Positions 14,198 through 60,098 of a stretch of DNA of 64,000 nucleotides are shown here, piece after piece. Position 1 is the stretch's first letter, and each line of letters starts with the position of its first letter. Made by a program: the position numbers and the translations under genes. The notes under the pieces were generated by a model. It did not search any database, was not told the origin of the DNA, and worked only from the letters and a program-made list of their open reading frames with translations. The stretch is from positions 124,001 to 188,000 of IMG/VR virus record IMGVR_UViG_3300020122_000238; one strand, written 5' to 3'.

Positions 14198-14203
14198 GGT
14201 GTA
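14198..14203 (+). promoter_or_regulatory. Class A element GGTGTA
   Basis: 12 nt before ATG 14216; an inverted copy (TACACC) lies at 14185-14190. Confidence 0.6.
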
Positions 14204-14215
14204 GACAGGACTTCA

Positions 14216-15973
14216 ATGACCGCCCTATCCCCGCAAGACACGACGGCTTACGAAACGCTGAAGAAGGTTCGAGCGTCTACAACTGTTGCGTTGAAGCCCA
14301 CCCCCATGCTCAAGGCGAGCATCGTCGGCCTTGACGGACAAGCTCAGGATTTTCGCCTACGGTATTACCAGGTTCAGGGGGTCTTCCACCTTCTGACTAT
14401 GACCAGGATGATTTTGGGGGATGGGACGGGGCTCGGAAAAACGATCCAGGTGATCGCCGCTCTTTGCTATCTGCGTCCCCGGGAGCCCAACAACCGGGTC
14501 ATCATCGTCACCCCCAAGAGCGTTCTACGTCAGTGGGGAGAAGAGATCGAACGCTTCACGACGGGGGTCAAGTGCTACGTCGTGAGTGGGTCTCTTGAAG
14601 AACGCAAAGCGGTCTACGAGAAGTGGGCCAAAGCGCCTGTGGGGGATGACGCCCCCCTCTCCGTGCTCATCGTCAACTACGCGATCATCGTTCGAGACTG
14701 GGATCAGGGTAGCCAGTCTATTCCCGGGAAGACTCCCAAGGAGAAGCCGACCGTGCTGCCCGGCTACCTGGACGGGATCACTCGGGGAATGGACCTGGTC
14801 GTCATCTACGATGAGGCGACGGCATTCAAGAACCATTCAACCAAGACGTGGCAGACGTGCCGCTATCTCTCGGATCGAGCGAAGAGGTGCTACGGGCTCA
14901 CGGCGACGCTTCTCAAGAACAACTTGATGGAGGGCTTCTCGATCTTCAAGGTGATCGTCCCTCGCCTCTTTGCGACGAAGACTGCCTTCCTGGCAGCCTT
15001 CTGCATCGTCGAGCAAAAGAGGGTGGCGGGGAACCGGAAGATCCCCATGGTCGTGGGGTACAAGAACCTGGAAGCGTTCCGGGAGAGGATTGACCCCTAC
15101 TTCCTCGGGCGTCCGAAGCACGCGGTGTCTGCGGAGCTACCTGTGCTCACCACGAAGCAGATCATCGTGGAACTGTCGGCCGCCGAGGACCAGAAGTACC
15201 AGGAAGCCCTCTCGGGGGTCCTCGAAATGGGGGACGGGTCCACCAAGGACTACGAGGAGCACAAGGCCTTCGTCTCGCTCTGCTACTGCCAACAGGTCGT
15301 CGACTCGCTCACCTTGCTCAAGTACAAGGCGGGGGACGAGCTGCTCCCCGGCGGGTATGAGCGGCTCGATGCGGAGATCGCCAGCCACACGATCGCGAAG
15401 CTCGGGAGCAAGGAGCAGGCGTTCCAGGACCTCATTCTGGACGAGCTGGATGGTGAGAAGGTCATCGTCTACACCCGCTTCGAGTCTCTTGTGGGGCGCC
15501 TACAGGCCATCCTCAAGGAGAAGGGGATCAGGAGCGGGCGCATCACGGGGAAGGACTCGGATTCGGCTCGCCGAGCCCATCAGAAAGAATTCCAGAACCT
15601 CGATTCAGACATGAAGGTCATCTTCATCACGGACGCCGGAAGCGAGGCCATCAACCTCCAGGCGGCCAGCGCCCTCGTCTTCTACGATGCCCCCTGGAGC
15701 TGGGGCAACTACGTGCAGACCCTTGGGAGGCCGATTCGCATCGGGAGCCCTCACCCCAACGTGTGTGCTTACCACATCGTGGCTGTTCGTCCCAAGGCGG
15801 CGGGGAAGAACAAAAAGACGATCGACCATCACATCCTGACCCTCCTCACGAGTAAGAAGAACCTCGTCGACAAGGTTCTCGGAGAGGCCGCCGTTGGGGC
15901 TCTCGACTTCAAGAAGGATGGCGTTGGGGCTGGGACGAAGGAGCTGCTCAAGCAAATGCGTTCCGGCGAATGA
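14216..15973 (+). CDS. SNF2-family (SF2) helicase/ATPase
   Basis: LGDGTGLGKT Walker A, YDEA Walker B, LTAT motif III, AINLQ, QTLGRPIRIG motif VI. Confidence 0.9.
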   Translation: MTALSPQDTTAYETLKKVRASTTVALKPTPMLKASIVGLDGQAQDFRLRYYQVQGVFHLLTMTRMILGDGTGLGKTIQVIAALCYLRPREPNNRVIIVTPKSVLRQWGEEIERFTTGVKCYVVSGSLEERKAVYEKWAKAPVGDDAPLSVLIVNYAIIVRDWDQGSQSIPGKTPKEKPTVLPGYLDGITRGMDLVVIYDEATAFKNHSTKTWQTCRYLSDRAKRCYGLTATLLKNNLMEGFSIFKVIVPRLFATKTAFLAAFCIVEQKRVAGNRKIPMVVGYKNLEAFRERIDPYFLGRPKHAVSAELPVLTTKQIIVELSAAEDQKYQEALSGVLEMGDGSTKDYEEHKAFVSLCYCQQVVDSLTLLKYKAGDELLPGGYERLDAEIASHTIAKLGSKEQAFQDLILDELDGEKVIVYTRFESLVGRLQAILKEKGIRSGRITGKDSDSARRAHQKEFQNLDSDMKVIFITDAGSEAINLQAASALVFYDAPWSWGNYVQTLGRPIRIGSPHPNVCAYHIVAVRPKAAGKNKKTIDHHILTLLTSKKNLVDKVLGEAAVGALDFKKDGVGAGTKELLKQMRSGE

Positions 15974-15974
15974 C

Positions 15975-15980
15975 GGTGTA
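15975..15980 (+). promoter_or_regulatory. Class A element GGTGTA
   Basis: 11 nt before ATG 15992. Confidence 0.6.
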
Positions 15981-15991
15981 GGGGTAGGAAC

Positions 15992-16627: not shown

Positions 16628-16628
16628 C

Positions 16629-16634
16629 GGTGTA
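16629..16634 (+). promoter_or_regulatory. Class A element GGTGTA
   Basis: 12 nt before ATG 16647. Confidence 0.6.
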
Positions 16635-16646
16635 GGGACGAAGCGA

Positions 16647-17540
16647 ATGCCTGACGAGAAAAAGGTCTGCTCCAAATGTGGGGGTACGGGGCGAATCGAG
16701 GTGGACGACCTTACGGTCCGCCAGTGCATCTGCGCGTTTGCCCGAGCAATGAAGGAACACCTCGGGGCAGAGATCGCTCTAGCCCCGTCCATCACGTCGA
16801 GCCCGCTGTTCGAGATGGGCGGCGTGGACAAGGACCCCAAGACCGATCTAACGAGCAAGAACCTCTTCCTCAAAGGGGCCTGGGAAGACCTTCTCCCTCA
16901 TCTGAAATGTGCTCTTGTCGGGAAAGGTCTTTTTTTCTCCTTCAAGGTCTTGACCGACGAGCGGCTCAAGATCGTTTACGTTGGGGATGAGAGCTACAAG
17001 GCTCGCTCCAAGAGCAAGCGAGATGAGTCTCCTACCTTCAACTCGCTGACGGACATCTTGGGCCCGGATGTCGACCTTGTGATCCTACGTATCGGTAAAT
17101 TGGGGTACCCCAATAAAGCCATGCCCGGGATTCTCAAGGAAGCTCTCATGCTTCGTGAAGCTGCCTCGAAAGCTACTTGGATCAACGAGACGCCAGATAG
17201 CTTTTTCGGTCCCGGTCACTTCTCCTACGATGAGAACGTGGCTGAGTACATCGAAAAGAGATTCGCGATCATGGACCTGACGAACAAGAATCGTACGAAG
17301 GAAGCTCCCCAGGGGTGCTACATTCCTTCCGAGCCTGTCGACGTGGATATGAACTCTCCGCCGCAAGCACAGATCGTCACGGAAAAGGCATGGGAATCAG
17401 CTCCGAAGCCTCGGTTCGAGAGCCGTCCTTCGAGTGCCAACTCGGATGGGGCGTTGGGGGATGGCGGCGGAGGGTACAAGCCGAAGTACAAGCCGAAGAA
17501 GTACGGTGACAACGGTGGAGGAGGGGGTCCGCTCGGATGA
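16647..17540 (+). CDS. Zn-finger protein, possible degenerate DnaC-like helicase loader
   Basis: N-terminal CSKCGGTG...CIC; directly upstream of and coupled to the helicase; no intact Walker A seen. Confidence 0.45.
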   Translation: MPDEKKVCSKCGGTGRIEVDDLTVRQCICAFARAMKEHLGAEIALAPSITSSPLFEMGGVDKDPKTDLTSKNLFLKGAWEDLLPHLKCALVGKGLFFSFKVLTDERLKIVYVGDESYKARSKSKRDESPTFNSLTDILGPDVDLVILRIGKLGYPNKAMPGILKEALMLREAASKATWINETPDSFFGPGHFSYDENVAEYIEKRFAIMDLTNKNRTKEAPQGCYIPSEPVDVDMNSPPQAQIVTEKAWESAPKPRFESRPSSANSDGALGDGGGGYKPKYKPKKYGDNGGGGGPLG

Positions 17541-24680: not shown

Positions 24681-24719
24681 GGGTAGAAGTTCAATCAAGA
24701 TGGGGGTCAAGGCCCCAAC

Positions 24720-24725
24720 GGTGTA
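24720..24725 (+). promoter_or_regulatory. Class A element GGTGTA
   Basis: 10 nt before ATG 24736. Confidence 0.65.
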
Positions 24726-24735
24726 AAGAGTCCTT

Positions 24736-26310
24736 ATGTCATCCCACGAAGATCTCGTCTTCCACCTTCGAAGCCTGAGCCGCGTGATCTACTACGTCAC
24801 CGACGAGGAAGATCGGTTTCTCGTGAAGCTGCGGGACACCCTCAAGAAGCACGCTGATCGGTGCTGGGTGTTCAGCGCAACCTTCGGGCTCGTTACGCTC
24901 AAGAACCTGATCTCGGACTGGACCTCGAAGCAGCACGCGATCAATCGTGAGCAGCTCTCGATCCACGACGCCTTGGAGAGCATCTACAAGGACGACCCCA
25001 AGGACGAGCGCAATTTCTACGTTTTCACGGACCCGGAGCGCTGGCTCGCCGATGCCCACGTCAATCGGCGCCTCCTGAACATCGTCCACCAGGTCCACCA
25101 GGACATCAGAACCCTCAAGATCCTGATCTTCGTCGGGACCCGCAAGGCGATGCCGGAATCGCTTGCCCCCTACATGGAGGTCATCCAGGACACCGGGCTG
25201 ACGCCGGAAGAGATCATGTCGACGGTCGAGGCAGCCTGCAAGCACCTCCCCGGAGTCGAGCCCCCGCCCAACTGCGCGCAGCTCTTCGCTGGGATGAACA
25301 GCTACCAGATCGACATGGCCGTGGCGAAGTCTATCGTGGCCACCAAGAAGGACGAGACGTCTCCGAAGCGGATCGACCCGGCGCACATCACGAAATACCG
25401 TCGGAACCAGCTCAAGAAGACGGACCTGCTCCAGCTCCTCGACGTCGAGGGGGTGACCTTCGATCAGCTCGGCGGCAACCACCGCTTCAAGGAGTGGGCC
25501 ATTGAGACGAAGGATAGCTGGAGTGAGGAAGGGCGGGCCTTCGGTCTCAAGCCCCCGAAGGGTGTCCTCCTCGTGGGTGTCTGGGGCTGCGGTAAGTCGC
25601 TGGCGTCGAAGGCGATGGCTCAGGCGTGGGGTATGCCGGTCGTCCAGCTCGAAATGGGCAAGCTCCGTTCGGCCAACGTTGGCCAGTCCGAAGCCAACGT
25701 CTATAAGGCCATTCGGCACATCGAGTCGATCGCTCCCTGTGTGGTGTGGATCGATGAGGCCGAGAAGAGCCTCGGCGGCGGGGCGTCCTCGGCGGCCTCC
25801 GATGCAGGAACGACGAGCCGCACGATCGGTATCCTCTCGACATGGCTCCAGGAGACCACGTCTCCGATCTGCCTCGCCCTCACGGCGAACAGCCTGAAAA
25901 CGCTTCCGATCGAGTTCGTCAACCGGATGGACGAGCGGTTCTTCTTCGACATCCCGAGCGAGGAAGAGCGGATCGAGATCCTTCGTATTCATCTCCGCAA
26001 GGCGGGGCAGAACCCGAGTGATTTCCAGCTCGCCGCTCTGTCCGATGCCTGCAAGGGCATGGTCGGTCGCGAGATCGAGCAGACGGTCGGAGCAGGTATG
26101 CGGAAGAGCTTCAAGGTACGCAGCAAGAAGCTCGATGAGACCATCCTCCTGGACATCGCGGGGAAGAAGCCCCGGATCCTGAAGACGATGGTCGACGAGA
26201 TCCGCGAGCTGGTCGAGTGGGTCGGCTTCGACACGGACGCTAACGAAGGGATCAAGGCTCGCCTGGCTTCGGCCCCGAGCAAGGGAAGCAGCTTCAAGCT
26301 CGTCGAGTGA
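24736..26310 (+). CDS. Ycf46-like AAA+ ATPase
   Basis: PKGVLLVGVWGCGKS, WIDEAEK, TAN, RMDERFFFDIP; degenerate N-terminal AAA. Confidence 0.85.
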   Translation: MSSHEDLVFHLRSLSRVIYYVTDEEDRFLVKLRDTLKKHADRCWVFSATFGLVTLKNLISDWTSKQHAINREQLSIHDALESIYKDDPKDERNFYVFTDPERWLADAHVNRRLLNIVHQVHQDIRTLKILIFVGTRKAMPESLAPYMEVIQDTGLTPEEIMSTVEAACKHLPGVEPPPNCAQLFAGMNSYQIDMAVAKSIVATKKDETSPKRIDPAHITKYRRNQLKKTDLLQLLDVEGVTFDQLGGNHRFKEWAIETKDSWSEEGRAFGLKPPKGVLLVGVWGCGKSLASKAMAQAWGMPVVQLEMGKLRSANVGQSEANVYKAIRHIESIAPCVVWIDEAEKSLGGGASSAASDAGTTSRTIGILSTWLQETTSPICLALTANSLKTLPIEFVNRMDERFFFDIPSEEERIEILRIHLRKAGQNPSDFQLAALSDACKGMVGREIEQTVGAGMRKSFKVRSKKLDETILLDIAGKKPRILKTMVDEIRELVEWVGFDTDANEGIKARLASAPSKGSSFKLVE

Positions 26311-28080: not shown

Positions 28081-28084
28081 ATTC

Positions 28085-28090
28085 GGTGTA
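28085..28090 (+). promoter_or_regulatory. Class A element GGTGTA
   Basis: 10 nt before ATG 28101. Confidence 0.65.
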
Positions 28091-28100
28091 GACGTTTCGG

Positions 28101-28688
28101 ATGAAGAAACGTCTCCGCATTTTGATGGACATTGATGGTGTTGTGGCCGATTTCATGGCCACTGCCCTCGACATCGTGGAAAAGCTCTCGGGGGATCGAT
28201 ACCACCCCACCGATTTCCACGCGTGGGACATCTTCGAGACCATCCCCCGAGAGCACGAGCTGGACTTCCTCGACGCATTCAAGGTCAAGGGGACCTGCCT
28301 TGGGATTCCCCTCATCCCGGGCTCCAAGGAAGGCGTCGATGGGCTGCGGGCTCGCGGCGATCTCTACGTCGTGACCTCCCCGATGGGGTGCGTCGAGACT
28401 TGGTCCCATGAGCGGGATGCCTGGCTGAAGCAGCACTTCGAGATCCCTACCTCGAAAATCATACACACATCGGCCAAGTACGTCTGTGCGGGGGACTGGC
28501 TCATCGACGACAAGCCGGCGAACATAACCCCCTGGCTGGAGCACAACCCGAACGGGAAAGCGATGCTCTGGCACCACAACTACAACGCCAAGGAAGACCT
28601 CGGGCCTCGCGTGCATCGAGTCCACAACTGGGTTGATGTCTTTGCCATCCTGGACGCGGAGACGACCACTGGACGATTCGATGACTGA
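28101..28688 (+). CDS. 5'(3')-deoxyribonucleotidase (HAD, NT5C family)
   Basis: DIDGVVADF, VVTS, WLIDDKP motifs. Confidence 0.85.
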   Translation: MKKRLRILMDIDGVVADFMATALDIVEKLSGDRYHPTDFHAWDIFETIPREHELDFLDAFKVKGTCLGIPLIPGSKEGVDGLRARGDLYVVTSPMGCVETWSHERDAWLKQHFEIPTSKIIHTSAKYVCAGDWLIDDKPANITPWLEHNPNGKAMLWHHNYNAKEDLGPRVHRVHNWVDVFAILDAETTTGRFDD

Positions 28689-30032: not shown

Positions 30033-30911
30033 TTGGACGTGGTGACTGAAGAGTTCCTCCGAAAGAAGTACCTTGGCGATCTGCTCTCCCTTCGGCAGAT
30101 CGCTTCTCTTTGTGGTGTGGCTGTCGGCACGATCCGCTACCACATGAAGCGCTTTGGGATTCCTCGCCGAACGAAATCCGAGGCCCTCTCTGGGGACAAG
30201 AACCCCATGCATGGGAAGACGAAGTCAGATGCGACCCGGCGGAAAACCTCAGAGACCCTTCAAGTCACAAATAAGGATCCTGATGTAAAGGCCCGCCGAA
30301 GCGCCTCAACTTCGGGGATCCGAAATCCCATGTATGGGAAAACACACACAGAAGAGGTAAAGGAAGCCGCACACACAAGGCTGAATTCTATACGACACAC
30401 CCCAGACTTTGTGTCAGCTCAAAAAGCTGCAATGCAACGACTGGAAGTCCGCCAAGCTCTCTCGGAGAGCGCCTCCCAAAGAGTGGGGGAGAAGAACCCC
30501 TTCTTTGGGCATGAGCATAGCTCCGAGACCAAGCAGAAAATAGCTCAAGCCAACCGAGGTCGTTTTCTAGGGGAGAAGGGTTCCAACTGGAAGGGCGGGA
30601 AGACTCGACTCTCAGCTCTGATTCGGAACTCCGAACCGGCAATCCGATGGCGAAAGGATGTCTTCAAGAGGGACGCCTATACTTGCCAGAGGTGTGGTCA
30701 AATTGGGGGTCAACTACAGGCGGATCACATTCAACCTCTTGCGGGGCTCCTCGACGAGCACTGCATCAAGACCCTCGAAGATGCGTTCAACTGTCCCACC
30801 CTCTGGGATTTGACCAACGGTCGGACGCTCTGCATTTCGTGTCACAAAAAGACGCCTTCCTACGCGGGCAACTATCAGAAGAATTATCCTGCGTTCAAGG
30901 TCGCGGTGTAG
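30033..30911 (+). mobile_element. Free-standing HNH homing endonuclease with NUMOD3-like repeats
   Basis: NPMHGK/NPMYGKTH/NPFFGHEHS repeats, CQRC, DHI, NGRTLCISCH; ends FKVAV like thyA. Confidence 0.85.
30905..30910 (+). promoter_or_regulatory. Class A element GGTGTA overlapping a stop codon
   Basis: 10 nt before ATG 30921. Confidence 0.6.
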
Positions 30912-30920
30912 GCTTTCACA

Positions 30921-31430
30921 ATGCGGGCTCTCGACTGCTTCCTTCTTGAGGTTATACCCACCGGGGCCCTTGCGTTTTTTGACTTGGACCTCGGGGTGTA
31001 CTATCGACTGGGGGAGTCGCCGGCTCATGGGTATCCCAACATCGTGGAAGGGGAGGTCCAGCGACGGATTCAACGTATATTGTGCGAGCCCGTCGCTGTC
31101 TTCGATAGGATACTTGAGGATCGCGCTATGGAAATGCTGTGGAGAGCAGCATTGTCAAATGGGTGGATCCCTGAAGACACCCTCACAACCTGGTTTGCAT
31201 CGCATGACCTCGATTACCAGGGGTGTCGTATAGTCCACAACGGCTGTGAATTGGCTGTTGTTACTCCTGATACTCTCGGGGGGATTATCAGAGCTGATGA
31301 CGTGCAAGACTCACCCTCTGCCAGAAACCTTCTCCTGTTCAACCTCAAGGGGGTTGTGAGGATTGGAGACACGGAAGCAGTTCAAAACGCACGTCCCACC
31401 TTGTGGGACAAACTTGGAGACGACCTATGA
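30921..31430 (+). CDS. Hypothetical protein with TLWDKL-acidic tail
   Basis: 169 aa after a class A element. Confidence 0.55.
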   Translation: MRALDCFLLEVIPTGALAFFDLDLGVYYRLGESPAHGYPNIVEGEVQRRIQRILCEPVAVFDRILEDRAMEMLWRAALSNGWIPEDTLTTWFASHDLDYQGCRIVHNGCELAVVTPDTLGGIIRADDVQDSPSARNLLLFNLKGVVRIGDTEAVQNARPTLWDKLGDDL

Positions 31431-31845: not shown

Positions 31846-31852
31846 CGCTTTC

Positions 31853-31858
31853 GGTGTA
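31853..31858 (+). promoter_or_regulatory. Class A element GGTGTA
   Basis: 10 nt before ATG 31869. Confidence 0.65.
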
Positions 31859-31868
31859 CTATGCCCAG

Positions 31869-32372
31869 ATGGGCACCGAATTCGAGCGCAAGTTCCTCCT
31901 CACCACCACCGAGTACTTCCACCCCGAGGCCTATCGGAGTGGCGGGACGAACATCGTCCAGGGCTACCTCTCGGAGAAGCCCTGCGTGCGGGTTCGGACC
32001 ACGCTGAACACCCCCAACGAATTCCACGGTTTCCTCACCGTCAAGGGTCCGGGTCTACTCGAACGCCCCGAGTTCGAGTACGAAATCCCCTATGAAGAGG
32101 GAGTTTCGATGCTCGCCATGTGCCCGGACACACTGAAGAAGGTCAGATTCACGGTGTACACCGCGGGGCATCTTTGGGAGGTCGACCGTTTCGGTGGCCA
32201 CCTCGAAGGGCTCTGGCTTGCGGAAGTCGAGTTGAAGAACTCGACTGAGTACATCGAGCACCCCGCCTGGCTCGGGAAAGAGGTCACGTTCGACGCTCGC
32301 TACCAGAACGTGAACCTCATCAAATGGGGGGTCCCCCAAGAAGACCCCGGTGTAATCTTGGGGAATGCCTGA
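31869..32372 (+). CDS. CYTH-domain (triphosphate tunnel) protein
   Basis: EFERKFL, QGYL, VRVR, LTVKG, EFEYEI, WEVD, AEVEL. Confidence 0.88.
   Translation: MGTEFERKFLLTTTEYFHPEAYRSGGTNIVQGYLSEKPCVRVRTTLNTPNEFHGFLTVKGPGLLERPEFEYEIPYEEGVSMLAMCPDTLKKVRFTVYTAGHLWEVDRFGGHLEGLWLAEVELKNSTEYIEHPAWLGKEVTFDARYQNVNLIKWGVPQEDPGVILGNA
32349..32354 (+). promoter_or_regulatory. Class A element GGTGTA
   Basis: 10 nt before ATG 32365. Confidence 0.65.
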
Positions 32373-32832: not shown

Positions 32833-32837
32833 GTCCT

Positions 32838-32843
32838 GGTGTA
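32838..32843 (+). promoter_or_regulatory. Class A element GGTGTA
   Basis: 10 nt before ATG 32854. Confidence 0.65.
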
Positions 32844-32853
32844 CTAGACCCCC

Positions 32854-33237
32854 ATGAAGAACTTCCCGTCTGACCTTCACCATGACATCCCCGAAGAGCG
32901 GGCGACCATGATCCTCAAAATGAAGATGGCATCACAAAACTACTACAGTAGCGCCATCAGGACGGGCGTCCACGCCTTCATCGAGTTCAACGGGCTGATG
33001 AACGAGTTCATACAGGTCTGCGAGAAAGCCCAGAACGCCGGCCAAGACTTTACGATGGCCAACACCCATTCGGGGCAGGCGCTTCCGTTCCACGAATACA
33101 ACGCGAAGTACCTCGCCGAGAAGCTCAACTGCATCTACGGTCCCGCGCTTCTCGGCGACGATGCCAACCGTCGTGCCTTCGTCGAGGAACTCTTCGAGGG
33201 TGAGTACGAGCTGGTCAAGAAGAAGCCCCAGCGATGA
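32854..33237 (+). CDS. Hypothetical protein
   Basis: 127 aa. Confidence 0.6.
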   Translation: MKNFPSDLHHDIPEERATMILKMKMASQNYYSSAIRTGVHAFIEFNGLMNEFIQVCEKAQNAGQDFTMANTHSGQALPFHEYNAKYLAEKLNCIYGPALLGDDANRRAFVEELFEGEYELVKKKPQR

Positions 33238-36503: not shown

Positions 36504-36542
36504 GCTCTTTTATAGCAAAAAGAGCTGGGAGGACCAGTTCTC

Positions 36543-36548
36543 GGTGTA
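36543..36548 (+). promoter_or_regulatory. Class A element GGTGTA
   Basis: 10 nt before ATG 36559. Confidence 0.65.
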
Positions 36549-36558
36549 AAGCGTCCAC

Positions 36559-39204: not shown

Positions 39205-39369
39205 ATGGCGGATATAGAGATCCATCTGTCTGGGGAAAACGAAGACTGGCTTTGTAAGAAAGATGACGAAGAACCCAAAAAGCCAAAAGAGGCGACGCTC
39301 GTTGAACGTGTGGCTCGGCGAGCGTCGCGATCAAAACGTCCCCCAAAAGAATCCGGAATGGTGTACTAG
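39205..39369 (+). CDS. 54-aa protein with LVERVARRA tag
   Basis: MADIEIHLSGENEDWL...; starts 2 nt after ART stop; below ORF-track cutoff. Confidence 0.5.
   Translation: MADIEIHLSGENEDWLCKKDDEEPKKPKEATLVERVARRASRSKRPPKESGMVY
39360..39365 (+). promoter_or_regulatory. Class A element GGTGTA
   Basis: 10 nt before ATG 39376. Confidence 0.65.
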
Positions 39370-39375
39370 ATCCCC

Positions 39376-44101: not shown

Positions 44102-44112
44102 TGCCTCCAGTT

Positions 44113-44118
44113 GGTGTA
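44113..44118 (+). promoter_or_regulatory. Class A element GGTGTA
   Basis: 10 nt before ATG 44129. Confidence 0.65.
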
Positions 44119-44128
44119 CTTGGGGGAT

Positions 44129-44644
44129 ATGCCCTCCTACAAAAATAAGCCCTCCCCCAAGAACCCCCTCCTCCTGGGAGGGTTCTTTCTCATCCTCCTC
44201 ATCGGTTTCGGGATCACCGCGGGGTGCAAGGATATCCGGTTCGATCAGAACTGCGAGGGGCATCTCAAGCGAGCAGCAGACGCCAACACGATCGAGCTGG
44301 CATCCACGGAGCTGGGGACGGCCATTCAGTACCTCAAGAGGTCGGGGCTCACGTCCGGCAACACGTCGATCCTCTTCGACACCCCCAACAACGACATCGG
44401 CTTTTGGTTCTCGAACCTCAGCGCTTCCCAGGCGGAGCTGGCCAAGGTGACGCCCGAGACCGCCATGCTGGAGAGGAGCATGTTGCTCCTCAAGCTCCGG
44501 GAGACGTTGCTCGATGGGCAAGTGGTGACCGTCCCGTCGGGCATCACGCTTTTACCGAATGTCCAGCTCTACTTCTGGTGGGGCGTCATCTCGGCGATCG
44601 GGTTCGTCACGGGCCTGGGTGTGGCGATGTCCCGCGCCTATTGA
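44129..44644 (+). CDS. Membrane protein (two TM segments)
   Basis: N- and C-terminal hydrophobic helices. Confidence 0.6.
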   Translation: MPSYKNKPSPKNPLLLGGFFLILLIGFGITAGCKDIRFDQNCEGHLKRAADANTIELASTELGTAIQYLKRSGLTSGNTSILFDTPNNDIGFWFSNLSASQAELAKVTPETAMLERSMLLLKLRETLLDGQVVTVPSGITLLPNVQLYFWWGVISAIGFVTGLGVAMSRAY

Positions 44645-50377: not shown

Positions 50378-50382
50378 GTTTC

Positions 50383-50388
50383 GGTGTA
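50383..50388 (+). promoter_or_regulatory. Class A element GGTGTA
   Basis: 10 nt before ATG 50399. Confidence 0.65.
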
Positions 50389-50398
50389 AGATCGGAGG

Positions 50399-50749
50399 AT
50401 GCACACCATCCGTTTCGAGAGGTATTACAATGTCAAGGCCCAAAAACGCCCTCAACAACTCCGCCCCTCAACACGACGGTGGAATAGAGAGACACTTCTT
50501 GCTGTACTTCGTCAGGACATCCTGAATATTCAGACGAATCCCACACCAGAGACTCGCCGTCTTCACATCGAGAAGATGGCTGAGAAGTACAGAGCCAAGA
50601 GAAACATCGTGGCATGGTGTTTCTCCAGGTTGAAAACGGAGGGATTGATTGGCAAACCTGTCAATGGGATTCCTTCAGAATCTCCTTTCTCTCGCAAGAG
50701 GTCTGAAGTGGCCTGGACAGCAACCGCTTTCTACGTGACTGGGACATGA
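50399..50749 (+). CDS. Basic hypothetical protein, paralogue of the next gene
   Basis: RPS.RRW..E.LL, VAWCFSRLK.EG, W.AT shared. Confidence 0.6.
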   Translation: MHTIRFERYYNVKAQKRPQQLRPSTRRWNRETLLAVLRQDILNIQTNPTPETRRLHIEKMAEKYRAKRNIVAWCFSRLKTEGLIGKPVNGIPSESPFSRKRSEVAWTATAFYVTGT

Positions 50750-51822: not shown

Positions 51823-51893
51823 TTTGAGCTGCACTTCGAAAAGGCAAAAGAGGCGGCTGATATTCTCGCTCTTCAGCTCGGACACACGTTCTT

Positions 51894-51899
51894 GGTGTA
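51894..51899 (+). promoter_or_regulatory. Class A element GGTGTA
   Basis: 10 nt before ATG 51910. Confidence 0.65.
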
Positions 51900-51909
51900 G
51901 CCACGAGGG

Positions 51910-52908
51910 ATGATATCTCTTGAAAGACTCGAAGAAGTCACCACCCTCATCGTCCACGACAACTGCCCGGATGGTCTCGCCTCAGCGATGATCCTGCATG
52001 ACGCTCTGCCCAAGGCCGAGATCGTCTACATGCGGCACATGTCCCCAGAGCTGGCCGCCCTGGAGCCCAAGCCGGGGATGCTCTTCTGCGACTTCTCTCC
52101 CCATGCCGACCAGGCCCAGAAGTTCGTGGACGCGGGCGCCATCGTGCTCGACCACCACAAGTCCTCCCAGGCTGTCATCGAGTCCTTCGGAGAGAACGGC
52201 GTCTTTGGGGATGAAGCGCAAGACCCGGGCGTCTCCGGAGCTGTGCTTGCCTTTTGCGAGGTGTGGCTCCCCATGTGGGATTCGATGTGCCTGAAGACGC
52301 TTGGGATGACGTACCCCCCTGTGGATGGGTTTCCCCGTGCAATCAGGGAGTTCGCAACTCTCGCTGGCATTCGAGACACCTGGCAGAGACAGAGCCCCCG
52401 TTGGCTCGAAGCCTGTGCTCAGGCCGAAGCGCTTCTGTTCTGGCCGCGAGAGAAGTGGTTCGAAGCGGAGCTGGGGGAGATCCTCTCACGACCCATGCTG
52501 GACATTGGGCCCGTCCTGGTCCAGAAGCAGCAAGACAAGGTCAAGAGCATCGTGGAGAGGGCCTACCGCTTCACGACGCCGGTCGGAACGCGCGTGGTGG
52601 TCTTCCAGGGGCTCACGACGACGAGCGATGCAGCGGAGCTGATTGACAAGGATGCGGACCTCGTCATTGGATTCTCGTGTCAGTTCGACGGGGAGAACCA
52701 CAAGCTAGCGTTCTCGACGCGGAGCCACACGACGTTCGACTGTGCGAAGTTCGCGAAGGTCTTCGGGGGTGGCGGACACACGAAAGCCGCGGGGTTCAAT
52801 CGGACGATGGTCCCGACTGACCCGCAGCCTTACGAAATGGTGCGTCGGACTCTTGCGTTGTTCGAAGGCCCCATGGAGCCTGATAACACGAGCCTCATCG
52901 ACGGGTAG
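51910..52908 (+). CDS. DHH/DHHA1 phosphoesterase
   Basis: HDNCPDG, CDFS, LDHH, STRS, GGGGHTKAAGF. Confidence 0.88.
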   Translation: MISLERLEEVTTLIVHDNCPDGLASAMILHDALPKAEIVYMRHMSPELAALEPKPGMLFCDFSPHADQAQKFVDAGAIVLDHHKSSQAVIESFGENGVFGDEAQDPGVSGAVLAFCEVWLPMWDSMCLKTLGMTYPPVDGFPRAIREFATLAGIRDTWQRQSPRWLEACAQAEALLFWPREKWFEAELGEILSRPMLDIGPVLVQKQQDKVKSIVERAYRFTTPVGTRVVVFQGLTTTSDAAELIDKDADLVIGFSCQFDGENHKLAFSTRSHTTFDCAKFAKVFGGGGHTKAAGFNRTMVPTDPQPYEMVRRTLALFEGPMEPDNTSLIDG

Positions 52909-53622: not shown

Positions 53623-53912
53623 GGCAGGACCTTTCGGAGAGTCTCCTCGAATTCCTTCAACGCCGTGCGGATGGACTTTCCGAGGTATTCGTGATTCCAC
53701 TCGCCCGTCTGAGGGTCGACAGGGTCGACAGTGAGCTGGCTGGCCGCCCTGGGGTCGTCGAACCGACAGTCGACATAGTCCCACTTCGGAAGAACGCGAA
53801 GGGGTCCCGCCAGGGTCTTGATGTAGAGGGCCTCTCGGACGCCTTGCCAGCCTCCGAGACGTAGAACGATCTCGATGATGCCCGTATCGAAGGCGTTTTT
53901 TCGGGTGCTCAT
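53619..53912 (-). CDS. Hypothetical protein, paralogue of 53248..53622
   Basis: Same shared blocks; follows a class B element. Confidence 0.65.
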   Translation of the reverse strand: MSTRKNAFDTGIIEIVLRLGGWQGVREALYIKTLAGPLRVLPKWDYVDCRFDDPRAASQLTVDPVDPQTGEWNHEYLGKSIRTALKEFEETLRKVLP

Positions 53913-53948
53913 GGAGGTCCTACAGGAGGACGGGGCATACGATCAACC
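53910..53948 (-). promoter_or_regulatory. Class B promoter-like element
   Basis: GGTTGATC-N16-TGTA-GGACCTCC-ATG. Confidence 0.7.
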
Positions 53949-54317
53949 CTTCGGCTTCTTCAGGATCAGGGCGAGCTGTGCCGCGAAAGAGACCTGTTCC
54001 CTGGTCGGGCCCGGCTCACCCTTCGCGATCTTCTTCAGCTCCTTCTGGACAGCCTTGACAGCTCGCTTTGCGGGGGCTTCCTTCGACCAGCCGACCAGGC
54101 GATCCTCAACGGATTGCCCTGCGAAATCCTTCGGGTTGGCCAGGAAACAGGCCTGGAAGAGCCTGCAATGAAGGCTTTCATCCATGAAAGCTGCCCGAAG
54201 AGGCTCACTCTCGCCGTCTTCCGAGATGAGGTAGACACGGAAAGCCTTGGGGTCATCCCACTCCGCGAACACACCGTTGATTTTGCTAGCGTCTTCTTTG
54301 ATCTTGGAGGTAGACAT
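53943..54317 (-). CDS. Hypothetical protein (MSTSKIKED...)
   Basis: Start chosen at the ATG after the class B element. Confidence 0.6.
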   Translation of the reverse strand: MSTSKIKEDASKINGVFAEWDDPKAFRVYLISEDGESEPLRAAFMDESLHCRLFQACFLANPKDFAGQSVEDRLVGWSKEAPAKRAVKAVQKELKKIAKGEPGPTREQVSFAAQLALILKKPKG

Positions 54318-54353
54318 GCTTCTCTTACACACCGGAAACCTTGAGGATCAACC
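54315..54353 (-). promoter_or_regulatory. Class B promoter-like element
   Basis: GGTTGATC-N16-TGTA-N8-ATG. Confidence 0.7.
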
Positions 54354-57621: not shown

Positions 57622-57664
57622 AATACAAGAATATCGGTAACTTCCCTCTAGAAAAATGAAAGCA

Positions 57665-59032
57665 ATGAGCACGTCTCAATCTCTTCGCGTTTTGGCGAAG
57701 TATAAAGCCAAAAAGAAGGTCAAGAATCAAGACGGCGAGGACATGACCGTCTACGAGTATTCCGACAAGCAAATCGCCAACCGGAACCGGGAGAAGGCGA
57801 AGCGAATCGAGAAGCTCCGAGGCAAGATCGACGACGTCCGCTCGAAGGCCAAGAAGGACCTGAAGTCGAGCGACCCCGAGAAGATGCTCACGGCACTCGC
57901 CGTGATGCTGATGGACCACACGTATGAAAGGGTTGGGAACGACGAGAGCGCGGACGACGGGCACTTTGGGGTCACGGGCTGGCAGAAGGACCACATCACC
58001 TTCAGCAAGGGCGGGGCGACCATCAAGTACGTCGGCAAGTCCGGCGTCAAGCACGTCAAGAAGGTGACCGACTCGACCATCACCAAGGCGCTCAAGGATG
58101 CCTGTGAGGCGGCTGAGAACGAGACGTCTTGCATCTTCGAGTGGGACGGGGGCAAGGTCTCAGCCGAGAAGGTGAACGCCTACCTGAAGGAGTTCGACAT
58201 CTCGGCGAAGGATATCCGTGGGCTACATGCAAATGTCGAAATGCAGGAACAGCTCAAGGCTGCCAGGAAGAAGGGCGGCAAGCTTCCCGAGGACCCCAAG
58301 AAGCGGGATAAGCAGCTCAAAGAGGAGTTCAAAGAAGCACTCGAAGTCACGGCGGAAGCCGTAGGCCACGAGCCTGCCACGCTGAAGAGCCAATATTTGG
58401 TCCCTGGAATGGAGGAAGATTTCTTGAAGGACGGCGTGATCAACGAGAAGCTCCACACGAAGACGGCAGATCTCAAGCAGGGGTGCGCCGGCTGTAGTTG
58501 CCACGCTAAACCCGAGGAGCACGACCAGTCGGAACGGGTGATTGCTCGTTTCTTGAGCCAGGACAAGAAAGCGGTGGGGTATTACGATACCGATCGTGAT
58601 GAGACTTGGGTGGATCCTACAAAGGACCTCGACAAGTGGCTTGATAGGCTTCTACGCTTGACTCAAGAGGCCAAACGAGATGCCCCAGGAGAGCATCGAC
58701 GTGGAGAAGGCCCTGGGAAGGCCTATCTAGAGCTTTCCAGCTTTATGGGAGACCGGGAGCACACGAAGTGGTACAAGTTCTTCTATGCTTCCACTGTTCA
58801 GAAGGATGTCTCGTCCGCTATAGTCCCCAACGACTATAGCGATCCCAAGATGGCGCAAGACTACAGTCAATGGCTCGACAAGTTGGAGGACGCTATCAAG
58901 GACGCGGACGCGGAAATCCGTAGGGATGACCGTCCTGGAGACAAGATGTTCGAGCTGAAATGGATCATGAAGAACTACAGTAAAGAGAAGTGGTATGCCT
59001 ATTACTTCATGCAGTCCATGACATTCCGGTGA
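57665..59032 (+). CDS. DNA topoisomerase IB with C-terminal extra domain
   Basis: RVGN, GKSG, KDIR, VGH.....KSQY match the catalytic R-K-R-H-Y set. Confidence 0.85.
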   Translation: MSTSQSLRVLAKYKAKKKVKNQDGEDMTVYEYSDKQIANRNREKAKRIEKLRGKIDDVRSKAKKDLKSSDPEKMLTALAVMLMDHTYERVGNDESADDGHFGVTGWQKDHITFSKGGATIKYVGKSGVKHVKKVTDSTITKALKDACEAAENETSCIFEWDGGKVSAEKVNAYLKEFDISAKDIRGLHANVEMQEQLKAARKKGGKLPEDPKKRDKQLKEEFKEALEVTAEAVGHEPATLKSQYLVPGMEEDFLKDGVINEKLHTKTADLKQGCAGCSCHAKPEEHDQSERVIARFLSQDKKAVGYYDTDRDETWVDPTKDLDKWLDRLLRLTQEAKRDAPGEHRRGEGPGKAYLELSSFMGDREHTKWYKFFYASTVQKDVSSAIVPNDYSDPKMAQDYSQWLDKLEDAIKDADAEIRRDDRPGDKMFELKWIMKNYSKEKWYAYYFMQSMTFR

Positions 59033-59147
59033 TTGCTCACCAGGTTCTTGATCGCCGACAAAGTCATGGTCGCCTACGGTCCCGGCCGAGTGCCGGAGCA
59101 AGTCCGACACTGGCTCCACATCGCCATCCCTGGGAAAGTCAAGTTCG

Positions 59148-60080
59148 CTAGAACTCTTCCATAAGGGCGTTCATGTAGGTAAAGGGGTCCTCTTGGTGCT
59201 CCGAGATGAAGGGGGTGAGCCCCTCCCTACGCCCCACCACCACAAGCTCTCCAACAGCCTCCCGCTTCGCTCCGTCCGAGTTGATAGAGCGCCCCATCTT
59301 GACCTCGTGGATCTCCCATCCAGCGTACAGCTCCCTCACGAGGGGCGTATCCGAGTTTGAGAGAACGACAGCCACACCACGCTCTGCCAGCTCGGCGAAG
59401 CTCTTGGCGAGGGCTCTCTGTGCTTCCTCGTCGAATCCTTCTGAGGTGTACCCCGTGAAGCTCGCGGTCTCAGAGACCGGCACGTAGGGGGGATCGAAGT
59501 AGACGAGGTCTCCCGGCTGAGCCTTGGAGATACTGTCCTGCCAGGAGTTGTGACGAACAAATAGTTCGTCTTGTCTTGAATCGATCTCCCGGAGTACCTG
59601 AGCACAAGCCGAGATATTGGCCGCATCACAAATCTGGGCCATCTCGTCCTTTCCCCAAGAAGAGTTGAATTGCCCCTTCTTGTTGGTACGGTACAGGCCG
59701 TTGAAGCAGGTCTTGTTCAGGAAGATCATCCTGACAGCGCGGGTGACCGGCTCCAGAAGAGCCGGATCCATCTGTCGCCAGGTCGTGAACGTTTCCTTGG
59801 GGGCGATGCGGTACGCTTCCGCAACCATGAGGAGGTCTCGAATCACCTCCTCACCGAAGCCGCCGATCATCAGGTACGCGTTGACCAGCTCGGCATTCAG
59901 GTCGGACAAGACGGCCTTCTCGAACCTCTTTTCTTGAGCGAGCGCCCAGAAACTAGCGCCACCCCCAAGGAAGGGTTCGTAGTAGGTCCCAATCTTCTTG
60001 GGGTAGATTTTGAGGAGGAAGGGAAGAAGGGTGGTCTTGCCACCAACCCATTTGAGAAAGGGGCGCGCGGGGGAGGACAT
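59148..60080 (-). CDS. dam: Dam-family (D12 class) DNA adenine methyltransferase
   Basis: FLKWVGGK, EPFLGGG, FNGLYRTN, YFDPPY, LSNS; target specificity not proven. Confidence 0.88.
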   Translation of the reverse strand: MSSPARPFLKWVGGKTTLLPFLLKIYPKKIGTYYEPFLGGGASFWALAQEKRFEKAVLSDLNAELVNAYLMIGGFGEEVIRDLLMVAEAYRIAPKETFTTWRQMDPALLEPVTRAVRMIFLNKTCFNGLYRTNKKGQFNSSWGKDEMAQICDAANISACAQVLREIDSRQDELFVRHNSWQDSISKAQPGDLVYFDPPYVPVSETASFTGYTSEGFDEEAQRALAKSFAELAERGVAVVLSNSDTPLVRELYAGWEIHEVKMGRSINSDGAKREAVGELVVVGRREGLTPFISEHQEDPFTYMNALMEEF

Positions 60081-60092
60081 ACCCCTCCTGGC

Positions 60093-60098
60093 TACACC
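60093..60098 (-). promoter_or_regulatory. Class A element GGTGTA
   Basis: 12 nt before methylase ATG 60080. Confidence 0.6.

What the first reader, a model, noticed from the sequence alone, without database searches (positions are those of the whole stretch)
14198..60098. Class A element: GGTGTA a fixed 10-12 nt before 15 start codons, suggesting a leaderless phage promoter
Seen (position, spacer): 14198 (12), 15975 (11), 16629 (12), 24720, 28085, 30905, 31853, 32349, 32838, 36543, 39360, 44113, 50383, 51894 (all 10) and minus-strand 60098 (12). Variants are CGTGTA 44647 (9) and GGTGTC 47667 (10). It is often preceded by C. Most spacers lack a Shine-Dalgarno and I found no shared -35. The genes are replication, nucleotide-metabolism and accessory types. 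Inference: a single -10-like box read by a phage sigma factor or RNA polymerase, with transcription starting at or near the AUG, defining a middle regulon.
Basis: partly seen in the sequence, partly recalled or inferred. Interest (0 to 1): 0.7.

Follow-up and report, generated by a model that had tools for sequence, protein, structure and literature searches.

The report
Leaderless-type promoter box of huge phages
A strictly conserved seven-letter DNA word (pyrimidine + GGTGTA) sits 10 letters before about one gene start in five in this uncultured giant soil phage and its relatives; it is most likely a phage-specific promoter that starts messenger RNAs at or next to the start codon, with no ribosome-binding site.

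Summary
All 15 listed sites are confirmed and a 16th was missed (minus strand, 62451). The window lies in a 275 kb fragment of a huge uncultured soil phage. That contig holds 170 copies of GGTGTA, and 44 of them have ATG exactly 10 nt downstream (background 2-3).

The element is Y-GGTGTA at -17 to -11, with no -35 box and no conserved spacer. Shine-Dalgarno-like words are depleted. Single-mismatch variants are almost unused.

It precedes the same genes (SNF2 helicase, AAA ATPase, nucleotidase) in relatives down to about 49% DNA polymerase identity, with spacing of 9-16 nt. It also precedes some SD-led genes from 15-38 nt away. That pattern fits a promoter, not a translation signal.

A second class shares the TGTA core: GTTGATC-N16-TGTAG-N7-ATG, in front of small unknown genes.

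No RNA polymerase gene was found. A divergent sigma-70/ECF-like factor occurs in every motif-rich record where I could look for it, and not in a huge phage (LR745208) without motif enrichment.

No RNA data could be listed, so transcription starts are inferred, not shown.

Verdict: a -35-independent, leaderless-type, middle-type phage promoter, probably read by a phage sigma factor. It is a new variant of a known kind.

The parts
14197..14218 (+). Class A box (Y-GGTGTA at 14197-14203), 12-nt spacer, ATG 14216; gene 14216-15973, SNF2-family helicase
   Evidence: motif conserved before the orthologue in L011, L012, L013, L014, L024, L025
15974..15994 (+). Class A box, 11-nt spacer, ATG 15992; gene 15992-16627 (211 aa, no Pfam match)
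16628..16649 (+). Class A box, 12-nt spacer, ATG 16647; gene 16647-17540 (297 aa, no Pfam match)
24719..24738 (+). Class A box, 10-nt spacer, ATG 24736; gene 24736-26310, AAA ATPase
   Evidence: conserved before the orthologue in six relatives with spacing 10-16
28084..28103 (+). Class A box, 10-nt spacer, ATG 28101; gene 28101-28688, NT5C 5'-nucleotidase
30904..30923 (+). Class A box, 10-nt spacer, ATG 30921; gene 30921-31430. The TAG formed by the box's TA and the next base is the stop codon of the upstream ORF 30033-30911
31852..31871 (+). Class A box, 10-nt spacer, ATG 31869; gene 31869-32372, CYTH domain
32348..32367 (+). Class A box, 10-nt spacer, ATG 32365; gene 32365-32832
32837..32856 (+). 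Class A box, 10-nt spacer, ATG 32854; gene 32854-33237
36542..36561 (+). Class A box, 10-nt spacer, ATG 36559; gene 36559-37104, RNA ligase domain
39359..39378 (+). Class A box, 10-nt spacer, ATG 39376; gene 39376-40623, ClpX-like AAA+ ATPase
44112..44131 (+). Class A box, 10-nt spacer, ATG 44129; gene 44129-44644
50382..50401 (+). Class A box, 10-nt spacer, ATG 50399; gene 50399-50749
51893..51912 (+). Class A box, 10-nt spacer, ATG 51910; gene 51910-52908 (weak DHHA1 match)
60078..60099 (-). Class A box (60093-60098), 12-nt spacer, ATG 60080-60078; gene 59148-60080, D12-class (Dam-like) N6-adenine DNA methyltransferase
62433..62452 (-). Class A box (62446-62451), 10-nt spacer, ATG 62435-62433; gene 62067-62435.
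13708..13745 (-). Class B promoter-like cassette (GTTGATC, 16 nt, TGTAG, 7 nt, ATG) before gene 13204-13710. It shares the TGTA core with class A
53910..53947 (-). Class B cassette before gene 53619-53912 (97 aa). Further window copies start at 14169, 53187, 54352 and 60516 (all minus strand), and a TTGAGC variant lies before ORF 12224-13168

Best explanation
Y-GGTGTA is the only sequence-specific element of a -35-independent promoter class. It is used by this huge phage and a wider clade of huge phages.

It lies where a sigma-70-family -10 element would lie if transcription began at the A of the ATG: its TA falls at -12/-11, followed by 4 nt and then 6 nt. The resulting mRNAs would have no leader, or one of 0-2 nt here and up to about 6 nt in relatives. 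They would be translated without a Shine-Dalgarno sequence.

The class heads about 60-70 genes in the 275 kb contig. Where a function is recognisable, they are DNA replication, nucleotide metabolism, DNA modification and ATPase genes, that is, a middle-type regulon.

The most likely reader is the host's multisubunit RNA polymerase carrying a dedicated factor. The best candidate is a divergent phage-encoded sigma-70/ECF-like protein. In this lineage it is found in the 94%-identical relative G001, behind a class B promoter.

Shown: motif, position, strictness, SD depletion, conservation, and co-occurrence with the sigma family.

Inferred: that it acts on DNA as a promoter, where transcription starts, timing, and who reads it.
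For: 1. Position and strictness. There are 44 copies at exactly 10 nt before ATG against about 2.7 expected. Information is confined to -17 to -11. No single-mismatch variant exceeds 5 sites, against 40 for the exact word with an ORF of 50 codons or more.

2. Geometry. The TA, 4 nt, 6 nt, ATG arrangement equals the '-10 motif 6-7 bp before the ORF' shown experimentally to drive leaderless genes in Deinococcus-Thermus (PMC12340547).

3. SD depletion. SD-like 4-mers occur in 7% of class A genes, 31% of other genes and 12% of random sequence. 55 of 60 class A starts are ATG.

4. Not tied to translation. In relatives with 49-71% PolA identity the same word precedes the same genes at 9-16 nt. In G000, nine copies lie 2-38 nt before called starts, six of them 15-38 nt upstream with an SD-like word in between.

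5. Need for a promoter. 33% of class A genes have a divergent upstream neighbour, against 16% of other genes. At G000 242.3 kb and 244.6 kb, two copies lie back to back in divergent gaps of 34 and 41 bp. At G000:46606 a -28 kcal/mol hairpin plus T-tract ends right at the box, which leaves about 16 nt or less for any leader.

6. Sister class B. GTTGATC-N16-TGTAG-N7-ATG has 25 copies at the exact spacing, and 30 against 0 control by pattern. It has sigma-70-family -35/-10 geometry and the same TGTA core.

7. Reader. No RNAP beta/beta' or T7-type polymerase was found in G000, G001 or G002. A 302-aa protein family matches TIGR02937 in all 9 members, best E 3.4e-7.

8. Co-occurrence. The sigma family is present in G001, L027, L028, G003 and G004. 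Motif counts against control are 51 vs 2 in G001, 70 vs 4 in G003 and 25 vs 0 in G004; L027 and L028 show start-linked copies by eye. Both sigma and enrichment are absent from LR745208 (22 vs 16).

9. Class B does not track the sigma. It is nearly absent from G003 and G004, so the sigma tracks class A.

10. Cascade. The sigma gene sits behind a class B promoter in G001 and L027, as expected if early transcription leads to sigma and sigma then drives class A.

11. Functions of class A genes.
Against: - No transcription start, RNA or timing data exist. No RNA run could be listed.
- The sigma gene is not on this contig, which is only about 58% complete. Its fold could not be confirmed: pLDDT was 57 and the profile found no PDB match.
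- The sigma has a conserved region-4 helix-turn-helix, which normally reads a -35 box, yet class A has none.
- The box lacks the T at -7 of housekeeping -10 elements (11 of 44), and its TG lies at -14/-13, not -15/-14.
- In class B the shared TGTA core lies 2 nt nearer the ATG. So either the two classes start at different points or they are read differently.
- Intrinsic terminators are not enriched upstream (4 of 71 against 3.4% of random windows).
- 72 further copies lie inside genes, 46 of them antisense. The hexamer alone may therefore not suffice, or antisense starts are tolerated.
- The co-occurrence rests on a handful of related phages and a single negative.
Confidence: 0.6

Rival explanations
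1. Same promoter function, but read by the host's own sigma factor (housekeeping or alternative). A small phage protein could redirect it away from -35-dependent promoters, as in T4 AsiA or Thermus phage P23-45 gp39. The phage sigma-like protein would then serve another class, for example class B or late genes.
For: - TA at -12/-11 with a directly preceding TG resembles an extended -10 arrangement, and there is no -35 box.
- P23-45 middle and late promoters are of the extended -10 class and are spared by gp39 (PMC7403470).
- The candidate sigma keeps a region-4 HTH. That would fit class B, which has a -35 box, and its gene lies behind a class B promoter. Self-regulation of this kind is common for ECF sigmas (own knowledge).
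Against: - The hexamer is far stricter than housekeeping -10 elements. It lacks T at -7, and its TG is one position off.
- The identical word is kept in phages of 53-65% GC and 26-100% sigma identity. That is easier to explain by a phage-borne reader.
- Canonical sigma-70 promoter matches are not enriched in the window (4 against 5.6 expected).
- Class B is almost absent from G003 and G004, which still carry the sigma family.
Confidence: 0.2
2. Initiator-type promoter of an unrecognised phage RNA polymerase. Transcription would start inside or right after GGTGTA, giving a fixed SD-less leader of about 10 nt rather than a leaderless mRNA.
For: - Short single-box promoters with the start inside the box are known for giant-phage non-virion RNAPs: phiKZ uses TATG, and AR9 uses AACA-N6-TA/G (PMC5312081).
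- Many large proteins here have no family match.
- The genome fragment is incomplete.
Against: - No beta/beta'-like or T7-like polymerase was found in G000, G001 or G002.
- The only DxDGD-bearing large protein in the window looks like a DUF4815 virion protein (weak, score 0.81), and one or two such motifs are expected by chance.
- AR9 and phiKZ transcripts have 26-491 nt or 31-40 nt leaders, not fixed short ones.
- The 10-nt spacing coincides with the sigma-70-family distance from -10 element to start, which this rival would leave as a coincidence.
- Class B supplies a -35 box at the canonical distance.
Confidence: 0.1
3. RNA-level signal. This could be a non-canonical ribosome-binding or translation-enhancer word, or the recognition site of an endoribonuclease that trims polycistronic RNA to give AUG-proximal 5' ends.
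For: - Fixed distance to the start codon.
- Many sites follow the upstream gene by only 8-21 nt, so read-through transcripts must exist.
- GGUG can pair with CACC of the canonical 16S 3' tail (own knowledge).
- Terminators are not enriched upstream.
Against: - Only 4 of the 7 conserved positions could pair with the canonical anti-SD. The GGUG end lies 12 nt from the AUG, about 7 nt too far.
- Other genes of the same genome use ordinary GGAG/GAGG words at the usual distance.
- In relatives the spacing drifts to 9-16 nt, and some copies lie 15-38 nt upstream of an SD.
- One third of sites head divergent units, where a promoter is needed and nothing else is conserved.
- The class B analogue has DNA-type -35/-10 geometry.
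Confidence: 0.06
4. Operator-type site for a phage DNA-binding regulator that acts near gene boundaries, similar to the stoperators or start-associated sequences of mycobacteriophages, and not itself a promoter.
For: - Many oriented copies in short intergenic gaps.
- Inverted pairs such as TACACC-N2-11-GGTGTA could bind a dimer.
- A 236-aa protein with two sigma-region-4-like HTH motifs is encoded at G000:23072-23782.
Against: - Nucleotide-exact spacing to the ATG is not expected of an operator.
- The word is only 7 bp, and most copies are single, not paired.
- The inverted pairs each face their own ATG at 9-10 nt, so they are simply divergent units.
- No other promoter-like element is present at these genes.
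Confidence: 0.04

Closest known systems
'-10 region adjacent to the ORF' leaderless expression of Deinococcus-Thermus (also Actinobacteria): TANNNT 6-7 bp before the start codon (PMC12340547; PMC3160421)
   Same: A -10-type element sits immediately before the start codon. The TA lies 10 nt before the ATG, which is the hexamer plus 6 nt. There is no SD, and the predicted mRNA has no 5'-UTR or a very short one.
   Different: There the host housekeeping sigma reads a degenerate TANNNT. Here only the TA is shared; T at -7 is not conserved, four extra upstream bases (GGTG) plus a pyrimidine are invariant, and mismatches are almost never used. The element is specific to a phage clade.
Thermus phage P23-45 middle/late promoters (extended -10 class, spared by gp39) (PMC7403470; Berdygulova 2011 cited there, not readable here)
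   Same: A temporal phage promoter class that dispenses with the -35 box and relies on an extended -10 region, in a genome of similar GC content.
   Different: Those promoters are read by host sigma A with a canonical -10 plus a TG motif. Here the box is non-canonical and a phage sigma-family gene co-occurs with it. No gp39-like factor was sought.
T4-type late promoters (TATAAATA at -10, no -35, read by the divergent phage sigma gp55) (own knowledge)
   Same: A single short, very strict box at -10 with no -35. It is conserved across a whole phage clade whatever the host, and read, in the model proposed here, by a highly divergent phage sigma-family protein.
   Different: The sequence differs. 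T4 late mRNAs have leaders with SD, and gp55 lacks region 4 and needs the clamp and gp33. Here the candidate sigma keeps a region-4 HTH and the genes are DNA-metabolism rather than late genes.
ECF (group 4) sigma promoters, such as GGAACTT-N16-TCTGA or TGAAAC-N16-CGTA (own knowledge)
   Same: Class B has the ECF geometry: a -35 box, 16 nt, a short GT-containing -10 box, then about 7 nt to the start. The candidate factor matches the sigma70-ECF superfamily model.
   Different: Class A has no -35 box at all. Neither class has the AAC-type -35 or CGT-type -10 consensus. The sigma carries an insertion of about 110 aa between its N-terminal helices and the region 2.3/2.4-like helix.
Giant-phage RNAP promoters (phiKZ late TATG; AR9 late AACA-N6-TA/G) (PMC5312081, PMC8244752)
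   Same: Short, phage-specific motifs in front of many genes of a very large phage.
   Different: Those depend on phage multisubunit RNAPs, which were not found here. They give leaders of 26-491 nt in AR9, and no leaderless transcript was found in phiKZ.
Start-associated sequences and stoperators of mycobacteriophages (own knowledge)
   Same: Repeated oriented short sequences at gene boundaries of a phage genome.
   Different: Those are 13-14 bp. The start-associated sequences contain the SD, and the stoperators bind the repressor. Neither has nucleotide-exact spacing to an SD-less ATG.

Membership tests
Housekeeping sigma-70-type -10 / extended -10 promoter | Hexamer TAnnnT with A at -11 and T at -7 | tested here: not met
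   T-12 and A-11 equivalents are invariant, but position -7 reads A7 C9 G17 T11 of 44
Housekeeping sigma-70-type -10 / extended -10 promoter | TG at -15/-14, one base upstream of the hexamer (extended -10) | tested here: not met
   TG lies at -14/-13, directly abutting the TA
Housekeeping sigma-70-type -10 / extended -10 promoter | Degenerate consensus with many near-matches in use | tested here: not met
   40 exact sites against 5 or fewer for any single-mismatch variant. Canonical promoter matches are not enriched
Leaderless '-10 adjacent to ORF' expression pattern | -10-type element ending 6-7 nt before the start codon | tested here: met
   TA, 4 nt, 6 nt, ATG in 44 copies, with shoulders at +/-1-3 nt; compare PMC12340547
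Leaderless '-10 adjacent to ORF' expression pattern | No Shine-Dalgarno sequence before the start | tested here: met
   SD-like 4-mers in 7% of class A genes, 31% of other genes and 12% of random sequence
Leaderless '-10 adjacent to ORF' expression pattern | Primary 5' end of the mRNA at, or within a few nt of, the start codon | not testable with these tools
   No RNA run could be listed. Indirect support only: a terminator abutting the box at G000:46606 and divergent gaps of 34-41 bp
ECF (group 4) sigma-dependent promoter | -35 box and short -10 box separated by 16-17 nt | tested here: not met
   Class A has no -35 signal. Class B does have this geometry
ECF (group 4) sigma-dependent promoter | A cognate sigma with regions 2 and 4 encoded by the system | tested here: inconclusive
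   All 9 family members match TIGR02937, best E 3.4e-7, below the curated cut-off. The gene is in G001, L027, L028, G003 and G004 but not on this contig. The structure model is poor
Shine-Dalgarno / anti-SD pairing signal | Complementarity to the 16S 3' tail at 5-10 nt from the start | tested here: not met
   Only GGUG could pair with the canonical tail, and it ends 12 nt from the AUG. The invariant U, A and Y are unexplained, and spacing drifts to 16 nt in relatives. The host 16S is unknown, so the canonical tail was assumed
Phage-RNAP promoter (T7-like, N4-like, phiKZ/AR9-like) | A phage-encoded RNA polymerase | tested here: not met
   No match to PF00562, PF00623 or PF00940 in G000, G001 or G002. 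The PF00940 control rang nowhere, so that one is uninformative, and highly divergent polymerases cannot be excluded
T4-type late promoter logic (single strict -10 box plus divergent phage sigma) | One strict box at -10, no -35, clade-wide conservation | tested here: met
T4-type late promoter logic (single strict -10 box plus divergent phage sigma) | Recognition by the phage sigma-like protein | not testable with these tools
   Co-occurrence only

The most novel reading that the evidence does not exclude
A clade of huge uncultured phages carries its own, highly divergent sigma-70-family factor, with an insertion of about 110 residues between its N-terminal helices and the region 2.3/2.4-like helix. 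This factor would direct -35-independent initiation from the 7-8 bp box Y-GGTGTA(G) so that transcripts begin exactly at the AUG. That would amount to a phage-encoded 'leaderless expression system' covering about a fifth of the genes. Their translation would be uncoupled from SD-dependent initiation, and every gene, even inside tightly packed arrays, would have its own start.
Probability: 0.4. Interest if true: 0.7.

Novelty: new variant of a known kind. Interest (0 to 1): 0.55.

Why it matters
Promoters of uncultured huge phages are essentially unknown.

**Annotation.** This word is so strict and so well placed that it can be used directly in this clade to fix start codons, delimit transcription units and sort genes into temporal classes.

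**Testable pair.** If the candidate sigma reads it, the pair is a compact, orthogonal promoter and sigma set. It can be tested in vitro without culturing the phage or knowing its host.

**Biology.** The system would be a natural case of large-scale leaderless gene expression run by a virus. It bears on how giant phages take over both transcription and translation.

Tried and rejected
**RNA evidence.** Two run searches found one soil DNA run and no RNA run.

**Phage RNAP.**
- Pfam models for beta, beta' and T7-type polymerase found nothing.
- The 1436-aa protein at window 6139-10449 has a DxDGD motif. It has no Pfam, PHROG or PDB sequence match, its Atlas neighbours are DUF4815 virion proteins, and one or two such motifs are expected by chance. 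I dropped it.

**Sigma fold.** The AlphaFold model of the 302-aa factor was too poor for a fold search (pLDDT 57). A profile search of the PDB gave nothing relevant.

**Upstream signals.**
- A -35 box for class A was sought by position matrix and by k-mer enrichment. Only general A/T-richness and stop codons appeared.
- Upstream terminators are not enriched.
- A possible third promoter word (TATACA) showed no coherent pattern.

**Host.** No close cultured phage was found and the contig has no tRNA. The host remains unknown.

**Records and literature.**
- The records behind L011, L014, L024 and L025 are not held, so the sigma could not be sought there.
- Literature searches for the word or for leaderless giant-phage promoters found no description.
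- The P23-45 primary paper is not held.

Full report
**What the window is.** The window is bases 124001-188000 of a 275.3 kb linear IMG/VR viral record. CheckV rates it about 58% complete, so the whole genome is a huge phage of several hundred kb. GC is 58%. The only run found to hold it is a soil metagenome.

No GenBank phage is close at the DNA level. The best protein match of its family A DNA polymerase is an uncultured 485 kb phage at 35% identity. In the large protein collection the polymerase has hundreds of relatives at 50-94% identity on contigs of up to 660 kb, so this is a populous clade of huge uncultured phages.

The window encodes an SNF2 helicase, a DnaB-like helicase, DNA polymerase A, an AAA ATPase, a ClpX-like protein, a 5'-nucleotidase, a CYTH protein, an RNA ligase domain, a Dam-like methyltransferase and a type IB topoisomerase.

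**The observation.** GGTGTA occurs 38 times in the window against 10.5 expected. A 16th lies on the minus strand at 62446-62451.

Genome-wide there are 170 copies. ATG lies exactly 10 nt downstream in 44 of them, with shoulders at 9 nt (11) and at 11-13 nt (7, 7 and 6), over a background of 2-3. Among all hexamers and all offsets before ATG this is the strongest signal. The reversed control pattern matches 2 times against 58.

The position matrix shows information only at -17 to -11: pyrimidine, then GGTGTA. There is nothing at -35 and nothing in the spacer. K-mer enrichment in the 50 nt upstream shows only A/T-richness and stop codons.

With a crude gene caller of my own (320 genes, 88% coding), about 60 genes (19%) carry the box 9-13 nt before a candidate start, and 55 of those starts are ATG.

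**Translation signal or promoter?** Six results point to a promoter.

1. SD-like words are depleted before class A genes: 7%, against 31% for other genes and 12% for random sequence. Other genes show ordinary GGAG/GAGG words, so the host uses a normal anti-SD.
2. Only GGUG could pair with a canonical 16S tail, and it ends 12 nt from the AUG. The invariant U, A and Y would be unexplained.
3. In relatives with 94, 71, 66, 55, 54, 53 and 49% polymerase identity (L009, L011, L012, L013, L014, L025, L024; GC 55-64%), the same word stands before the same genes while the flanks differ. These genes include the SNF2 helicase, the AAA ATPase and the nucleotidase. Spacing there ranges from 9 to 16 nt.
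4. In G000 itself, nine copies lie outside the 8-13 nt range before a called start. Six of these are 15-38 nt upstream with an SD-like word in between.
5. One third of class A genes have a divergent upstream neighbour, against 16% of other genes. At G000 242.3 kb and 244.6 kb, two copies lie back to back in divergent gaps of 34 and 41 bp, each 9-10 nt from its own ATG. In such a gap there is no room for any other promoter or for a leader.
6. At G000:46606 a strong hairpin with a T-tract ends right at the box. A transcript of that gene must therefore begin within the last 16 nt.

Upstream terminators are not generally enriched (4 of 71). Many class A genes can therefore also be read through from upstream.

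**Geometry.** With the A of the ATG as +1, the TA of the box is at -12/-11. That is where a sigma-70-family -10 element begins, and it equals the arrangement shown experimentally to give leaderless mRNAs in Deinococcus-Thermus: a -10 motif 6-7 bp before the ORF (PMC12340547).

The box is nevertheless not a housekeeping -10 element. T at -7 is not conserved, the TG abuts the TA instead of lying one base further upstream, and the word is far too strict. Canonical sigma-70 promoter matches are not enriched in the window.

**A second class.** The hexamer scan also revealed CTGTAG/TGTAGG 6-7 nt before ATG. Inspection showed the full cassette: GTTGATC, 16 nt, (Y)TGTAG, 7 nt, ATG.

- There are 25 copies at the exact GTTGATC-to-ATG spacing. 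The pattern TTGATC-N15-17-TGTAG matches 30 times against 0 in the control.
- The cassettes fill intergenic gaps of 30-39 nt before small genes (median 96 aa) that have no family match.
- This is sigma-70-family -35/-10 geometry with the start again at the ATG. It resembles ECF-type promoters in layout, though not in consensus.
- It shares the TGTA core with class A, but 2 nt nearer the ATG. I cannot explain this offset.
- Window copies lie on the minus strand at 13745, 14169, 53187, 53947, 54352 and 60516.

**Who reads it?**

- **No polymerase found.** No beta, beta' or T7-type polymerase was found in G000 or in the relatives G001 (350 kb, 94% polymerase identity) and G002. A DxDGD motif in the 1436-aa protein of the window is probably chance.
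- **Sigma-related genes exist.**
  - G000:23072-23782 encodes a 236-aa protein with two region-4-like HTH motifs.
  - G001 encodes a 302-aa protein that JGI names a sigma-24 family protein. It is not on the G000 contig.
  - Its family of nine members shows an N-terminal segment weakly matching Sigma70_r2 (Pfam E 0.035), an insertion of about 110 residues, an invariant region 2.3/2.4-like helix and a C-terminal HTH. Assigning these segments to sigma regions is my own reading of the alignment.
  - All nine members match the sigma70-ECF superfamily model, best E 3.4e-7, below the curated cut-off.
  - The predicted structure was too poor to use, and the PDB profile search was empty.
- **Distribution of the sigma family.**

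| Record | Sigma homologue | GGTGTA-N9-13-ATG vs control | TTGATC-N15-17-TGTAG vs control |
|---|---|---|---|
| G000 (this contig) | not on contig | 58 vs 2 (N10-12) | 30 vs 0 |
| G001 | yes, 100% | 51 vs 2 (N10 only) | 73 vs 0 |
| G003 (312 kb) | yes, 31% | 70 vs 4 | 4 vs 1 |
| G004 (155 kb) | yes, 26% | 25 vs 0 | 1 vs 0 |
| LR745208 (485 kb) | none | 22 vs 16 | 0 vs 1 |

  - The sigma family is also present in L027 (the 66% relative) and L028 (sigma 33% identical). Start-linked GGTGTA copies are visible in both.
  - In 160 kb of G003 the box is Y-GGTGTA-G at 9-10 nt from the ATG, again without a -35 box, at 53 gene starts.
  - So the sigma family travels with class A, not with class B.
- **Position of the sigma gene.** In G001 and L027 the sigma gene itself lies behind a class B cassette. 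In G003 it lies behind neither class.

The simplest model is a cascade. Class B (early-type, small unknown genes) drives the sigma gene, and the sigma then drives class A (DNA-metabolism genes). This is inference from co-occurrence in a few related phages.

**Comparison with known systems.**
- The element works like the '-10 adjacent to ORF' leaderless promoters of Deinococcus-Thermus and Actinobacteria.
- It also works like the single-box, -35-less phage promoters read by divergent phage sigmas (T4 late) or by a remodelled host holoenzyme (P23-45 middle/late; PMC7403470).
- It is not a member of the housekeeping -10 class, the SD class, the ECF promoter class or the giant-phage RNAP promoter class. 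AR9 and phiKZ transcripts carry leaders of 26-491 nt or 31-40 nt.
- I found no description of this word or of a leaderless promoter class in huge phages.

**Verdict.** It is a new variant of a known kind, of moderate to good interest. It can be tested directly in vitro with the candidate sigma and short templates.

Noticed in passing
window minus strand: 13708-13745, 14131-14169, 53150-53187, 53910-53947, 54315-54352, 60479-60516; variant before ORF 12224-13168: A second promoter-like class: GTTGATC, 16 nt, (Y)TGTAG, 7 nt, ATG. It lies before small genes with no family match. There are 30 copies in the contig and 73 in relative G001, against 0 in controls. It shares TGTA with class A but 2 nt nearer the ATG.
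   Followed up: yes
L017:1495-2403 (-) = G001:C1 about 280.2-281.1 kb; homologues P0121-P0129, L031, L032: A divergent sigma-70/ECF-like factor (302 aa) with an insertion of about 110 residues; two homologues carry a zinc-ribbon-like (DnaJ-type) insert. It is absent from the G000 contig and present in every motif-rich record where I could look for it. It lies behind a class B promoter in two lineages.
   Followed up: partly
G000:C1:23072-23782 (+), outside the window: A 236-aa protein with two sigma-region-4-like HTH motifs, encoded with an SD inside the block of large, probably structural, genes. It could be a second transcription factor of the system.
   Followed up: partly
window 59148-60080 (-) and all class B -35 boxes: A class A gene encodes a D12-class (Dam-like) adenine methyltransferase, and every class B -35 box (GTTGATC) contains GATC. 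Methylation of early promoters by a middle gene product could act as a switch. This is pure speculation; the enzyme's specificity is unknown.
   Followed up: no
G000:C1:242277-242312 and 244621-244663; many pairs in G003 (e.g. 45670/45693, 206196/206217): Back-to-back class A boxes (TACACC, 2-11 nt, GGTGTA) in divergent intergenic gaps of only 34-41 bp. These would be minimal bidirectional promoter units.
   Followed up: partly
window 30909-30911 and six other sites with a 9-nt gene gap: The TA of the box plus the next base (G or A) often forms the stop codon of the upstream gene, in frame with the downstream ATG. TAA or TAG occupies -12 to -10 in 29 of 44 sites.
   Followed up: partly
window 6139-10449 (+): A 1436-aa protein of conserved length lies next to the replication genes in relatives. 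It has no Pfam, PHROG or PDB match and carries a DxDGD motif near residue 997. Its Atlas neighbours are DUF4815 virion proteins (weak).
   Followed up: partly
window 57656-59032 (+): A eukaryotic-type topoisomerase IB catalytic core (Pfam E 8e-27), unusual for a phage.
   Followed up: no
relatives P0008, P0018, P0030, P0061 (polymerase) and L014:1651-4812 (SNF2 helicase): Several relatives carry inteins or LAGLIDADG insertions in the DNA polymerase and the SNF2 helicase. The window's copies are uninterrupted.
   Followed up: no
G000:C1:1-124000: The block of large SD-led genes, probably structural or late, has few class A or class B boxes. No promoter word for it was found. G003 has a similar motif-free stretch at 83-142 kb.
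   Followed up: partly
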